Assembly: GCF_011386835.1 (NCBI RefSeq)
Contig: NC_088792.1
Coordinates: forward strand, 7,812,001 to 7,876,000
Reading direction: 5' to 3'
DNA: 64,000 nt
From: Chrysemys picta bellii
Taxonomy: Eukaryota
Shown: piece by piece, positions 6,199-63,059 of the stretch
Layout: every line of letters starts with the position of its first letter
How positions within the stretch are numbered: position 1 is the stretch's first letter
Made by a program: the position numbers and the translations under genes
The notes under the pieces: generated by a model
Seen by the model: only the letters and a program-made list of their open reading frames with translations
The model's database searches: none
Told to the model about the DNA's origin: nothing

Positions 6199-6698
6199 CT
6201 TTGTCAAGAGCTGGACAGAGAGGTTTGCATAAAACAGGAATACAAGTAAACAACTTTAGGGGCTTCGATAATTCCCCGTTCCTTTGCACGTATTTCTGAG
6301 ATCTGATTCCATTTGTGAAGGAGAAGGTCTGGCTTGGGATCTCAAGTCCCCTGAGAACCGCTGTCTTCAAAGCCACATCGTTCTGGGGCTGCTTCGAATG
6401 AGATATGAACCAGAATGCATTGGCTGATTGGAAGCACTGGGACTTAGCCTAACCTCCTGAGATACATTTTTAGCAAGGCTAGGAGGTAGCTCATTTGGAA
6501 AAAAGATTTGTACGAAGGTGTGGGTTATGAGTTCATCCTTGAATGAGTTCATCCCTGTCGTCTTCAATAGAGCATTATTGAACTGTGGTGTACGCTAAGG
6601 TTCTGCTAATGTAACAATGCACCTGACAGGTCCTCTGTGGGAACTGAGCCTGGGACACCTGGATCTAAAAGCAAGCTCCATTCGCTTGGAGGCAGTAG

Positions 6699-7551
6699 CA
6701 TAAGAATAGCCAGATTGGATCAGGCCAATGGTCCATCTAGCCCAGTATCCTGTCTTCAACAGTAGCCGGTACAAGGTGCTTCAGAGGGAATGAACAGAAC
6801 AGGACAATTATCAAGTGATCCATCCCCTGTCATCCAGTCCCAGCATCTGGCTGGTAGTCAGAGGCTTAGGAACACCCAGAGTATGGGGTTGCGTCCCTGA
6901 CCATCCCAGCTAATAGCCATTCATGGATCTATCCTTCATGAACTTATCTAGTTTTTTGAACCCACTATACTTTTGGCCTTCACAACATCCCCTGGCAACG
7001 AGTTCCACAGGTTGACACTGCATTGTGTGAAGTACTGCCTTATGTTTGTTTTAAACCTGCTGCCTATTAATTTAATTCGGTGATCCCTTGCCCTTGTATT
7101 ATGAGAAGGGGTAAATAATATTTTCTCCACACCAGTCATGATTTTATAGACCTCGATCATATCCCCCCTTAGTCGTTTCTTTTCCAAGCTGAACAGCCCA
7201 GTCTCTTTAGTTTCTCTGCATAGGGAAGCTGTTTTGTAACCCAATCATTTTTGTTGCCCTTCTCTACATCTTTTCCAATTCTAATATGGCTTTTTGAGAT
7301 GGGGACGACCAGAACTGCACACCGCATTCAAGGTGTGGGCATACCGTGGATTTATATAGCGGCAATATATTTACTGTCTTATTATCGATCCCTTTCCTAA
7401 TAGTTCCTAACATTGTTTACTTTTTTGACTGATGCTGTACATTGAGCCGATATTTTCAGAGAACTATCCACAATGACTCCAAGATCTTTCTTGAGTGGTA
7501 ACAGCTAATTTAGACCCCATCATTCTGTACATATAGTTGGGAGTGTTTTTT
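6699..7551 (-). mobile_element. CR1 LINE 3' fragment (long 3' UTR subfamily)
   Basis: Minus [24 protein letters not shown]...NLWNSLP; 3' UTR similar to 21311-22140 and 57755-58346. Confidence 0.9.
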
Positions 7552-8580
7552 CCATACTTTGCATAAACTTCTTGGCATGGGTTATTACACTAACCATGCA
7601 GGGATCGTAATCTGACACGGGGATGACATCTCTTCTCCCCTGTCCCCAAATCCTCCGGGGACACCCCCTGTTCTTCAGAAGCAGTCTGGAAGGAAGGGTG
7701 GATGATGAAATGTTACTTATAGTGAGGAGAGGCAAGGCTTCTCAATTGTTGTGACCTGAGCAGGGCCGAGGTTTTGTGAATCACTGAATTAATCCCAAGT
7801 GTGAGCTGCTGGGGATGGCTCTGTACAGCTCCAGGCTTCAGTGGTGCCTTCAGCTGAAGCAGTGACACATCGTCTTCAGTAAGGTTATTCCTAGAAACCA
7901 AAAATCACCCCGAACTAAAACTTAAATAACCAATAGTTCCTGTAAGATGATCTGGCACTGCCCTTGGATTGTCTGTCTGCAAACCACTCCCTCTGGTGCT
8001 GACTCAGCATGTCATCAGCTGCCCTGACACCTCTTTCCTCCCCACCTCCCCCAGGGCAGAGAAGAATGAGTTTCTGCACTCCCACAGAACAGAGGAACTT
8101 GAGCTATAAACCAACTTCCTTAAAGCCCCAACTGGGGGTGGAGGGGAAAATAACTCCGTCATTACCGAAAACCCTCTTTGGGGACACAGGGCCACATCCT
8201 GAGCGGATGCAAACCAGGCTAGTTCCCTTGGAGGGTCTGGTCTGTAGTGTCGGTTTCTAGAATCATGAACATGTGGCAGTAGGATGAGATTTTTCCATTA
8301 CCTGCTGTCAGAGCTGTAAATGCCTTTGTGACCCAAGGACCTCCTTGATGCCAACTGGTGGGGGGCATACGGGTTACAGAGATCCAATGCGGGGTGGAGG
8401 TGTCATGTAGGTTTTCAGCACACTGGTCAGCATAATCTTTGCAAAATGTATGTGTGGAGAATGCCTAAGATGTGGGTGGGAAATGTATATGCTCAAGGCC
8501 TTGTAGTTCAAGGTACCATGACTTGAGACAGACTTCTCCAGACCAGAGGTGGGAGACCCTCATCTCCCTGGTGGAATGTT

Positions 8581-43339: not shown

Positions 43340-43511
43340 TATCTCCTAGAACTGGAAGAGACCCTGAAAGGTCATCAAGTCCAGCCCCCCTGCCTTCACT
43401 AGCAGGACCAAGTACTGATTTTGCCCCAGATCCCTAAGTGGCCCCCTCAAGGATTGAACTCACAACCCTGTGTTTAGCAGGCCAACGCTCAAACCAGTGA
43501 GCTATCCCTCC
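43340..43511 (-). mobile_element. Tortoise-type Pol III/SINE (tRNA head plus CR1-derived tail)
   Basis: Reverse strand has A box tagctcactgg, B box gagttcaatcc and a CR1-like tail ggactt gatgacc...cttccagttct. Confidence 0.88.
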
Positions 43512-43520
43512 GCCCCCTTA

Positions 43521-43824
43521 GTCCTGGTCTATACTGGGGGGAGGGTCGATCTAAGTTACGCAACTTCAGCTACCTGAATAACGTAGCTGAAGTCGACGTA
43601 TTTAGATCGACTTACCGTGGTGTCTTCACCGCGGTGAGTCGACTGCTGCCGCTCCCCCATTGACTCTGCTTGCGCCTCTCGCAGCGCTGGAGTACAGGGG
43701 TCGACGGGAGAGCACTCGGGGGGGGGGGGGGTGTCGATTTATCACGTCTAGACTAGACACGATAAATCGATCCCCGCTAGATCGATCGCTGCCCGCCGAT
43801 CCGGCAGGTAGTGAAGACATACCC
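43521..43824 (+). mobile_element. PIF/Harbinger-type MITE, CpG-rich
   Basis: TTA on both sides; TIR cctggtctatact/agtgaagacataccc; same family as 23889, 47409 and 58953. Confidence 0.88.
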
Positions 43825-51249: not shown

Positions 51250-51417
51250 GAAGGATAGCTCAGTGGTTTGAGCATTGGCCTGCTAAACCCAGGGTTGTGA
51301 GTTCAATCCTTGAGGGGGCCATTTAGGGATTTGGGGCAAAAATCTGTCTGGGGATTGATCCTGCCTTGAGCAGGGGGTTGGACTAGATGTCCTGAGGTCC
51401 CCGACATTCTGTGATTA
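51250..51417 (+). mobile_element. Tortoise-type Pol III/SINE
   Basis: A box tagctcagtgg, B box gagttcaatcc and a CR1-like tail; 84 of 89 nt identical to the reverse complement of 43419-43507. Confidence 0.9.
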
Positions 51418-51630
51418 CACCCACTTCCTTGCGAAAAAAAACTCCTTTCCCACCTAGTGCCTGATAGCTTATGTTAATACACGATCTTCCTCCCCACTAT
51501 AACGTGCCATACACACTGCACCCCACAAATGGCATATGTCAGTGTGCCCATGTGTTGGACAAAATGCAATAACTTAACAGAAGCCAATGTGTCTCATTCC
51601 CCACTCAATGTCTGTTCTTTTATCGCCTAG

Positions 51631-61714: not shown

Positions 61715-62101
61715 GTAAGTGGCCTTCTGTGATTTCTTACTCATGCCTAAGCAGGGTTGGATGACATGGTCATTAAGATACCTGAGCTCTCAGTCTAGGC
61801 TAGCACTAGGGGAGAACCTTCCTGAAAAATATTAGCATAGACTCAGGGCGAGTGACTAATGCTGAGAGCTTGAGGAGACCTAAGCTCTATTTGTGCAATG
61901 CCACAGTGGAGAGAGACCTTCCTGACCTCATCCTGGTGAACCCTTTAGATCATGAAGTCTTGTCTTAGTTCAGGCAACTGGCCTTCTCCATTCAAAAGAC
62001 TGACCCTCTTACTCTGCTTTGAGGTATCTCAGTAATGCCACTTCTCGCCTCTTAGCTGGGTAGCCCGGGGCTGCTTTCTCAGTTTATCTTTATATTGGCA
62101 G

Positions 62102-62251
62102 CACTACTGTGGACCCCCGGGAAAAGCTGGAGATCCTTCAGAAGACCTATGAGGAGATCGAGACCACGGTGTCACGAGTAGTGGAGAGGGACTATAAACT
62201 CCCAATGGATGACCTCTTGCCGCTGTTGATGTATGTTGTATCGCGGGCCAG
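62102..62251 (+). CDS. ALS2CL: ALS2CL coding exon 23 (VPS9 core, xDDLLP motif)
   Basis: attggcag|C; [49 protein letters not shown]; AG|gtaaga; 150 nt. Confidence 0.97.
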
Positions 62252-62306
62252 GTAAGAGATTCATGTTTACCACTGCTAATATAAAGCAGAGTGTCTCTTG
62301 CGTATG

Positions 62307-62506
62307 TGTAATCCACACACCTTCTGGGTGTGGTGGTCTGTCCCAGCTAGTGGCACCGAGACCACTTAGAGAGAGCGCTAAAATGAGTTTGCTCTACAGC
62401 CTTAGCTAACAGCCGGTTGGATCTTAGCTCATGCGGTAGAGGCTCATGCCCTAAGCTCCAGAGGTCCCCGGTTTGATCCCGCCCGCTGGGGTCTGTTGGT
62501 GTTACA
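62307..62506 (+). mobile_element. 200-bp solo-LTR-like element carrying a tRNA-like Pol III promoter
   Basis: TGTAA...TTACA termini; perfect 4-bp TSD tatg (62303-62306, 62507-62510); A-box-like tagctcatgcgg (62425-62436) and B-box-like ggtttgatccc (62470-62480). Confidence 0.75.
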
Positions 62507-63059
62507 TATGCTCCGTTAGGGCTGGTTGAAACTGTTTAATGGGAAATTTGGGGGTTTGATTAAATGAAGTATTTTGTGAGGTCTGTTTTCACACTAGGAA
62601 AAAAAAATCAAAATTGTCCATGGAGAATGAAGTATTTTGGCCAATATCCTGAAACTTAGATTTGGAGATGCAGTGCCTCGTGGGAGTTGTAGTTCAGTTA
62701 CCTCATGTTCCTATCCTCTATGGGCTGGGCTCCCTGGCTGGACTACATTTTGCATGCTGGACAACTTCTCTCTCCAAGAGGGAACACCATGGTGTATCAT
62801 GGCAGATGTAGTCTGACCAGGGAGCCTGACCTATAGAGGAGAATGGGAGCATGAAGTATGTGAACTACAACTCCCATGATGCACTGGCAGTATTTCCATA
62901 TAGAAAAATTCAATGGTGAGTGGGAAAACTTTGACAAATGAGAGACTCTGACCAACTGTAATTATGAAGTGTCTCCATATGCCACTGAAAACCGGTACTG
63001 CACTGCAGATGGAAAAGGCCTTCTGCTCACCCTCACAGCCCATGTCTTCAGTAGCAAGT

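What the first reader, a model, noticed from the sequence alone, without database searches (positions are those of the whole stretch)
62307..62506. Solo-LTR-like element with a built-in tRNA-derived Pol III promoter (possible tRNA analogue of Cassandra)
Seen: a 200-bp element in ALS2CL intron 23 with TGTAA...TTACA inverted ends and an exact 4-bp TSD (tatg). Its 3' half holds a tRNA-like block, tagctcatgcggtagaggctcatgccctaagctccagaggtccccggtttgatccc, with A- and B-box spacing. No AATAAA is present. Established: TG..CA ends with a 4-6 bp TSD are the integrase signature of LTR elements, whereas SINEs have variable TSDs and simple tails. Cassandra TRIMs are LTR elements that carry a 5S-derived Pol III promoter inside the LTR. 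Inference: this is the solo LTR of a small non-autonomous LTR/TRIM family that took up a tRNA-derived promoter, an LTR-SINE hybrid. I do not know of a description of this in turtles, but it may already be catalogued.
Basis: partly seen in the sequence, partly recalled or inferred. Interest (0 to 1): 0.75.

Follow-up and report, generated by a model that had tools for sequence, protein, structure and literature searches.

The report
Turtle solo LTR with tRNA-type promoter
A 200-base mobile-element remnant in a turtle intron is most likely one leftover end of a miniature retrotransposon that carries tRNA-style promoter boxes, a type already published in 2024 as "Helenus" but not yet listed for turtles or any land vertebrate.

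Summary
Bases 62307-62506 are a 200-bp insert with TGTAA...TTACA ends and an exact 4-bp repeat (TATG) on both sides. Its 3' half holds a tRNA-type box A and box B at the normal spacing. Each feature is far rarer than chance in this window (about 0.025 and 0.02 expected).

The reading as a solo LTR of a miniature LTR element with a tRNA-derived Pol III promoter is the best one. It is not a new kind of element. Kojima 2024 (PMC10886601) described such elements as Helenus (TRIMp3) and named them as the tRNA counterpart of Cassandra. Animal Helenus make 4-bp duplications. Vertebrate Helenus LTRs are 162-227 bp with TGTAA/TGTAG...TTACA/CTACA ends.

That paper lists no turtle or other tetrapod. Short words from this element link it to none of the published consensus sequences. 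I therefore class it as a new member of a known kind.

The scan's first readers noted at least ten similar elements elsewhere in this genome, two of them with two LTRs; all are unverified.

The parts
62303..62306 (.). Left copy of the 4-bp target-site duplication, TATG
   Evidence: Read. It is identical to 62507-62510 and cannot be extended.
62307..62506 (+). 200-bp putative solo LTR, TGTAAT...GTGTTACA. The + orientation is set by the sense of the tRNA-like block.
   Evidence: Single copy in the window. Bracket plus TSD: 1 seen against 0.025 expected.
62307..62417 (+). 5' part of the LTR, upstream of the tRNA-like block; it would be U3 under Pol III transcription. It holds hairpins at 62313-62333 and 62332-62365, and the left arm of a 23-nt inverted repeat at 62392-62414.
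   Evidence: Fold; inverted repeat. The U3 role is inferred.
62418..62490 (+). tRNA-derived block in tRNA register. The promoter parts are kept; the cloverleaf is not.
   Evidence: The stems were read by hand.
62425..62436 (+). Box A-like motif, TAGCTCATGCGG
   Evidence: fits TRGCY...YGG as given for Helenus in PMC10886601.
62470..62480 (+). Box B-like motif, GGTTTGATCCC (GGTTC read as GGTTT, a CpG-type change)
62507..62510 (.). Right copy of the 4-bp target-site duplication, TATG
62572..62575 (+). First T4 run downstream, the likeliest Pol III stop for a transcript starting at this solo LTR (about 160 nt)
   Evidence: The role is inferred only.

Best explanation
The element is most likely a solo LTR of a Helenus-type terminal-repeat retrotransposon in miniature (TRIMp3).

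In a full copy, two such roughly 200-bp LTRs would flank a short internal part of about 40-110 bp that holds only a tRNA primer-binding site and a polypurine tract. The box A and box B pair in the 5' LTR would recruit TFIIIC, TFIIIB and RNA polymerase III. Transcription would start near 62410-62418 and run through the internal part and the 3' LTR. The RNA would be reverse-transcribed and integrated by the proteins of an autonomous LTR element or retrovirus. That integrase produces the TG...CA ends and the 4-bp duplication. Later recombination between the two LTRs left the single LTR seen here.

Shown: the termini, the TSD, the box pair and its spacing, the absence of Pol II signals, and the match of size and layout to published vertebrate Helenus LTRs. 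Inferred: Pol III use, the existence of full copies, the partner element, and the recombination step.
For: - Exact 4-bp TSD and TGTAA...TTACA ends: 0.025 expected per window.
- Box A plus box B at tRNA spacing: 1 seen against 0.02 expected.
- No AATAAA, TATA or T4 in the element, so it lacks the signals of an ordinary Pol II LTR.
- PMC10886601 states that animal Helenus make 4-bp TSDs, that many families survive as solo LTRs with TSDs, and that most Helenus LTRs keep TRGCY/YGG and GGTTC but do not encode a working tRNA.
- Its Table S1 and Data S1 give vertebrate LTRs of 162-227 bp that begin tgtaa/tgtag and end ttaca/ctaca. In LTR-11_DR the tRNA-like part lies in the 3' half. Coelacanth LTR1_LCh is 199 bp and runs tgtaat...gtgttaca, the same end letters as here.
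- Like this element, the published LTR-11_DR LTR and its internal part show no T4 run (read by eye).
- True turtle tRNA SINEs in the same window have the head at the 5' end and an ATTCTGTGATT tail, unlike this element.
- Leads only: at least 10 first-reader notes of similar 175-211-letter elements in this genome, plus forms of 351 and 446 letters said to have two LTRs, one with a tRNA-Pro primer site.
Against: - Only one copy could be examined. There is no second copy in the window.
- No copy with two LTRs, PBS and PPT was seen by me.
- A solo LTR and a short DNA-transposon derivative with 4-bp TSDs cannot be told apart from one copy.
- Box B has GGTTT instead of GGTTC.
- There is no Pol III terminator inside the LTR, so how a repeated R region forms at the RNA ends is unclear.
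- Short words link it to no published Helenus consensus.
- Pol III transcription is untested, here and for Helenus in general.
Confidence: 0.72

Rival explanations
1. It is a true solo LTR, but the tRNA-like block is a passenger. It would be a piece of an old SINE or tRNA taken up in the LTR, with no role as a promoter. The family would then be transcribed in another way, for example by read-through or from Pol II signals too weak to recognise.
For: The cloverleaf has decayed and box B has a mismatch. There is no terminator in the LTR. Kojima notes that 'not a few' Repbase LTRs hold tRNA-like pieces without being TRIMs. No transcription data exist.
Against: Only the two promoter boxes, at their exact spacing, are preserved while the stems are not, which is the pattern of selection for a promoter. 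No Pol II signals are present. The layout is the same as in Helenus.
Confidence: 0.1
2. It is a short non-autonomous DNA transposon (MITE-like) of a superfamily that makes 4-bp duplications and has TGT... ends, such as a Ginger-type element. It would have picked up a tRNA-like piece.
For: Inverted TGTAA/TTACA ends and a 4-bp TSD. By my own knowledge, Ginger elements have TGTNR ends and 4-bp TSDs. The element folds into long hairpins.
Against: The terminal inverted repeat is only 5 bp; beyond it the ends match at 9 of 17 positions (read by hand). The fold z-scores are modest, -1.8 and -2.7. Size, ends and position of the block match published Helenus LTRs. Scan notes report two-LTR forms (unverified).
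Confidence: 0.07
3. It is an atypical or truncated tRNA-derived SINE, or a SINE lying in unrelated sequence. The TG...CA bracket and the 4-bp repeat would then be chance.
For: The box pair is SINE-like. A bracket plus TSD has a chance expectation of 0.025-0.13 per window. A second such bracket in the window, at 6610-7589, may be chance.
Against: The tRNA-like block starts 111 nt inside the element, not at its 5' end. There is no LINE-type, A-rich or simple-repeat tail; only 26 nt follow box B. Real SINEs in the window look different. The block is not a copy of the abundant local SINE: 46 of 73 matches against 39 +/- 2.8 for shuffles. The joint chance of the box pair and the bracket is very small.
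Confidence: 0.06

Closest known systems
Helenus (TRIMp3), Kojima 2024, PMC10886601; closest in layout are the vertebrate families LTR-11_DR (zebrafish) and LTR1_LCh/LTR2_LCh (coelacanth)
   Same: LTR of about 200 bp with TGTAA...TTACA ends and a 4-bp TSD. A tRNA-derived block that keeps box A and box B but is not a working tRNA. No Pol II signals and no T4 run in the LTR. Occurrence as a solo LTR.
   Different: The host is a turtle; the paper lists no tetrapod. Twelve words of 8-11 bases from this element were looked up in the published consensus file. Seven were absent. The matches read in context were the end letters gtgttaca (coelacanth), the box B word (a Lingula family), gctagtgg (coelacanth, carp), and two that lie away from the corresponding part of fungal or wasp LTRs. 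The internal part, PBS and PPT were not seen here.
Cassandra TRIMs of plants
   Same: The same principle: a non-autonomous LTR element with a Pol III promoter from a small RNA gene in each LTR.
   Different: Cassandra's promoter is 5S-derived and the elements are in plants (5-bp TSD by my own knowledge). Here the block is tRNA-type, the TSD is 4 bp and the host is a vertebrate. Rfam finds no 5S match.
tRNA-derived SINEs, such as the Cryptodira Pol III SINE present in this window
   Same: A tRNA-type box A and box B as an internal promoter.
   Different: SINEs have the head at the 5' end and a LINE-type tail (ATTCTGTGATT in the copy at 51250-51425), and LINE-type insertion. This element has 111 nt before the block, TG...CA ends, no tail and a 4-bp TSD.
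Ordinary TRIMs and solo LTRs transcribed by Pol II
   Same: Termini, TSD and small size.
   Different: No TATA and no polyadenylation signal; a tRNA-type promoter stands in their place.

Membership tests
Helenus / TRIMp3 | LTR ends TG...CA with a short inverted repeat | tested here: met
   TGTAA...TTACA.
Helenus / TRIMp3 | 4-bp TSD, as in animal Helenus | tested here: met
   TATG on both sides, exactly 4 bp. Criterion from PMC10886601.
Helenus / TRIMp3 | tRNA-derived sequence in the LTR with box A (TRGCY...YGG) and box B (GGTTC) | tested here: met
   TAGCT...CGG and GGTTTGATCCC, starts 45 nt apart; 1 seen against 0.02 expected. Box B has one CpG-type mismatch.
Helenus / TRIMp3 | LTR length within the family range (vertebrates 162-227 bp) | tested here: met
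   200 bp, compared with Table S1.
Helenus / TRIMp3 | Full copies: two LTRs around a short internal part with a PBS and PPT; whole element under about 1.3 kb | not testable with these tools
   No other copy in the window. Only unverified scan notes report forms of 351 and 446 letters.
Helenus / TRIMp3 | A multi-copy family in which the tRNA-like block is part of the family sequence | not testable with these tools
   Same reason. No internal TSD or tail suggests a private SINE insertion in this copy.
Helenus / TRIMp3 | Transcription by RNA polymerase III | not testable with these tools
   Needs wet-lab or RNA data. The paper also leaves it unproven for Helenus.
tRNA-derived SINE | tRNA-derived head at the 5' end of the element | tested here: not met
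   The block starts at base 112 of 200.
tRNA-derived SINE | LINE-derived, A-rich or simple-repeat 3' tail | tested here: not met
   The element ends ...GGTCTGTTGGTGTTACA. SINEs in the window end ATTCTGTGATT.
Cassandra | 5S rRNA-derived promoter in the LTR | tested here: not met
   No Rfam 5S match.
Functional tRNA gene | Cloverleaf that scores as a tRNA | tested here: not met
   No Rfam tRNA at E<=10. ARAGORN finds none at default settings.
MITE / Ginger-type DNA transposon | Terminal inverted repeats of tens of bases | tested here: not met
   Only 5 bp are inverted; the repeat finder shows no terminal inverted repeat.

The most novel reading that the evidence does not exclude
Turtles carry their own Helenus lineage, so far uncatalogued. 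It would be the first in a tetrapod, unrelated in sequence to the fish and coelacanth families, and so an independent capture of a tRNA-type promoter by a miniature LTR element. If the tRNA-Pro primer site reported in one scan note is right, a retrovirus-like partner rather than a Gypsy element might mobilise it.
Probability: 0.4. Interest if true: 0.45.

Novelty: new member of a known kind. Interest (0 to 1): 0.3.

Why it matters
If confirmed, it extends Helenus/TRIMp3 elements to amniotes. It would show that Pol III-driven LTR elements arise repeatedly. It would also give turtle genome annotators a reason not to file these repeats as SINEs or tRNA pseudogenes.

Such copies place possible Pol III units and TFIIIC sites inside genes. 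This one lies 53 nt after a splice donor, in the sense direction. As a single solo LTR of a published class, however, it is an annotation point and not a discovery.

Tried and rejected
As a precaution I sent the exon letters inside that stretch to no search tool.
- A word search with the 52-aa open frame running through the element, hoping for spurious ORFs from other copies, found no candidates.
- Pattern scans with CpG-tolerant motifs of 30-32 bases found nothing: two in metagenome contigs and one in viral contigs. These collections are unlikely to hold turtle DNA, so the blanks mean little.
- The search of earlier findings by sequence was blank.
- A second TGTAA...TTACA bracket with a 4-bp repeat at 6610-7589 looked at first like a longer relative. 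Local alignment to the element does not exceed shuffles, so I dropped it as evidence.
- I did not align the element to the published Helenus consensus sequences. Short-word look-ups replaced the alignment.
- Pfam scans of the longest ORFs in the window, looking for a handle to sample more of the genome, found nothing.

Full report
**What is there.** A 200-bp stretch at 62307-62506 starts TGTAAT and ends GTGTTACA. It is flanked on both sides by TATG (62303-62306 and 62507-62510), and that repeat cannot be lengthened on either side. The stretch lies 53 nt downstream of the GT donor of an exon at 62101-62253, on the same strand. The exon translates to ...LPMDDLLPLLMYVVSRAR, a VPS9-type motif by my own knowledge. 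I did not test the gene name by a search.

**Is it more than chance?**
- A TGTAA...TTACA bracket of 150-300 bp with a matching 4-bp flank is expected 0.025 times per window in Markov simulations and is seen once. For 100-1000 bp the expectation is 0.13 and two are seen.
- A box A (TRGCY...YGG) followed at tRNA distance by a box B (GGTTYRANNCC) is expected 0.02 times per 64 kb on both strands. It is seen once, inside this bracket.
- The two features are independent, so the element is real.
- It is the only copy in the window (blastn with word size 7; local alignments).

**The tRNA-like block.** In tRNA numbering, position 8 falls at 62425.
- The D-arm region reads TAGCTCATGCGGTAGAGG, with A14, G18, G19 and A21 in place.
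- The T-loop reads GGTTTGATCCC, one CpG-type C-to-T change away from GGTTCGATCCC.
- The stems are not kept. By hand, the acceptor pairs at 3 of 7 positions and the anticodon stem at 2 of 5.
- Rfam reports no tRNA match at E<=10, even when only 102 nt are searched.
- ARAGORN finds nothing at default settings. At an 80% threshold it finds only a poor pseudo-tRNA in another register.
- So the block keeps the promoter parts of a tRNA and nothing else.
- It is not a copy of the abundant turtle SINE head present twice in the window: 46 of 73 matches against 39 +/- 2.8 for shuffles.
- The element has no AATAAA, no TATA and no T4 run. The first T4 downstream is at 62572.
- Inside the element, a 23-nt inverted repeat puts box A in a hairpin, and a second, weaker box B-like word lies 55 nt upstream.

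**What it is.** A full-text search found Kojima 2024 (PMC10886601). That paper defines Helenus as terminal-repeat retrotransposons in miniature whose LTRs contain a tRNA-derived sequence. It names them explicitly as the twin of Cassandra and groups them with Cassandra and Ajax as TRIMp3. Its statements match this element point by point:
- Animal Helenus generate 4-bp TSDs.
- Many families survive as solo LTRs flanked by TSDs.
- Vertebrate LTRs are 162-227 bp.
- The published consensus sequences begin tgtaa/tgtag and end ttaca/ctaca. Zebrafish LTR-11_DR (193 bp) has the tRNA-like part in its 3' half. Coelacanth LTR1_LCh (199 bp) begins tgtaat and ends gtgttaca, as here.
- Read by eye, LTR-11_DR also lacks a T4 run in its LTR and internal part. 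The missing terminator is therefore not peculiar to this copy.

As a control inside the window, genuine tRNA-derived SINEs (about 51250-51425 on +, 43415-43524 on -) have the tRNA head at the very 5' end and an ATTCTGTGATT tail. This element has neither.

**How it most likely works.** In a full copy, TFIIIC would bind the box pair of the 5' LTR and Pol III would start near 62410-62418. The RNA would run through the rest of the LTR, a PBS, a PPT and the 3' LTR. A partner element's reverse transcriptase and integrase would copy and insert it, giving TG...CA ends and a 4-bp duplication. Recombination between the two LTRs then left this solo LTR with the original TSD.
- Shown here: the ends, the TSD, the boxes, their spacing, the lack of Pol II signals, and the fit to the published anatomy.
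- Inferred: everything about transcription, the full copy, the partner and the recombination.
- If this solo LTR is still transcribed, it would give an RNA of about 160 nt ending at the T4 at 62572.

**What could not be tested.** The decisive family-level tests need other copies. These tests are fixed ends, uniform 4-bp TSDs, the block present in all copies, and two-LTR copies with PBS and PPT.
I neither retried nor trimmed it, so read laying was unusable.
- As a precaution I sent the exon letters within that stretch to no search tool.
- A protein word search through the element's open frame found nothing.
- Three pattern scans of metagenome and viral contigs also found nothing.

The scan's own notebook gives leads only. 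At least ten first-reader notes in this same genome describe 175-211-letter LTR-like elements with TG...CA ends, 4-bp TSDs and tRNA-type boxes. Two longer forms of 351 and 446 letters are said to have two LTRs, one with a tRNA-Pro primer site. None has been followed up. I could not check that they are the same sequence family. They raise my odds modestly and are not counted as evidence.

**Relation to published families.** Instead I looked up twelve words of 8-11 bases from the element in that file.
- Seven were absent.
- gtgttaca, the end letters, occurs in the coelacanth LTRs.
- The box B word occurs in a Lingula family.
- tgtaatcc has 8 occurrences. The two I read lie inside fungal LTRs, not at their ends.
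- ctctacagc occurs once, in a wasp LTR.
- GCTAGTGG stands upstream of the block in the coelacanth and carp LTRs.

So the element is not a close relative of any published family. More distant kinship is open. Table 1 of the paper lists no turtle, reptile or other tetrapod. Later papers that cite Helenus add none. Whether Repbase or Dfam already holds the family under a plain LTR name could not be checked.

**Verdict.** The reading as an LTR with a tRNA-type promoter is the best explanation (about 0.72), but the class is already described. The rivals are:
- a true LTR whose block is only a passenger (0.10);
- a MITE-like DNA element (0.07);
- an odd SINE with a chance bracket (0.06).

This is a new member of a known kind, of modest interest (0.3). 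The most novel reading still open is a turtle-specific Helenus lineage that arose independently, the first in a tetrapod (about 0.4).

Noticed in passing
window 6610-7589: A second TGTAA...TTACA bracket with a 4-bp flanking repeat (CTAA), 980 bp long, enclosing a common-looking repeat. Its minus-strand 3' end vaguely resembles the end of the 62307 element, but the alignment is no better than shuffles. It may be an unrelated solo LTR or chance.
   Followed up: partly
window 51250-51425 (+) and 43415-43524 (-): Two copies of the Cryptodira-type tRNA-derived SINE, with the head TAGCTCAGTGGTTTGAGC...GAGTTCAATCC. The + copy, read to its end, has the tail ATTCTGTGATT. They fit a turtle genome and served as an in-window contrast.
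   Followed up: partly
window 26270-26350 (+): A MIR/CORE-SINE-like fragment (GGGTTCAATTCCCTGCTCTGCC...GTGACCTTAGCCAAATCA).
   Followed up: no
window 62392-62441 and 62413/62468: Inside the element, a 23-nt inverted repeat (78% complementary) places box A in a hairpin with the sequence just upstream. CCGGTTGGATC and CCGGTTTGATC form a direct repeat 55 nt apart, as if a second decayed box B preceded the block.
   Followed up: no
window 62345-62352: The 8-mer GCTAGTGG upstream of the tRNA-like block also stands upstream of that block in the published coelacanth (LTR1_LCh) and carp (Helenus-1_CCa) LTR consensus sequences. It could be a shared motif or chance. One scan note calls the same spot CTCF-like, but by hand it fits the CTCF core poorly.
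   Followed up: no
window 62101-62253 (+): An exon with a VPS9-type motif (LPMDDLLPLLMYVVSRAR). The element lies 53 nt after its splice donor in the sense direction, so a Pol III unit there could collide with host transcription or splicing. This is speculative.
   Followed up: no
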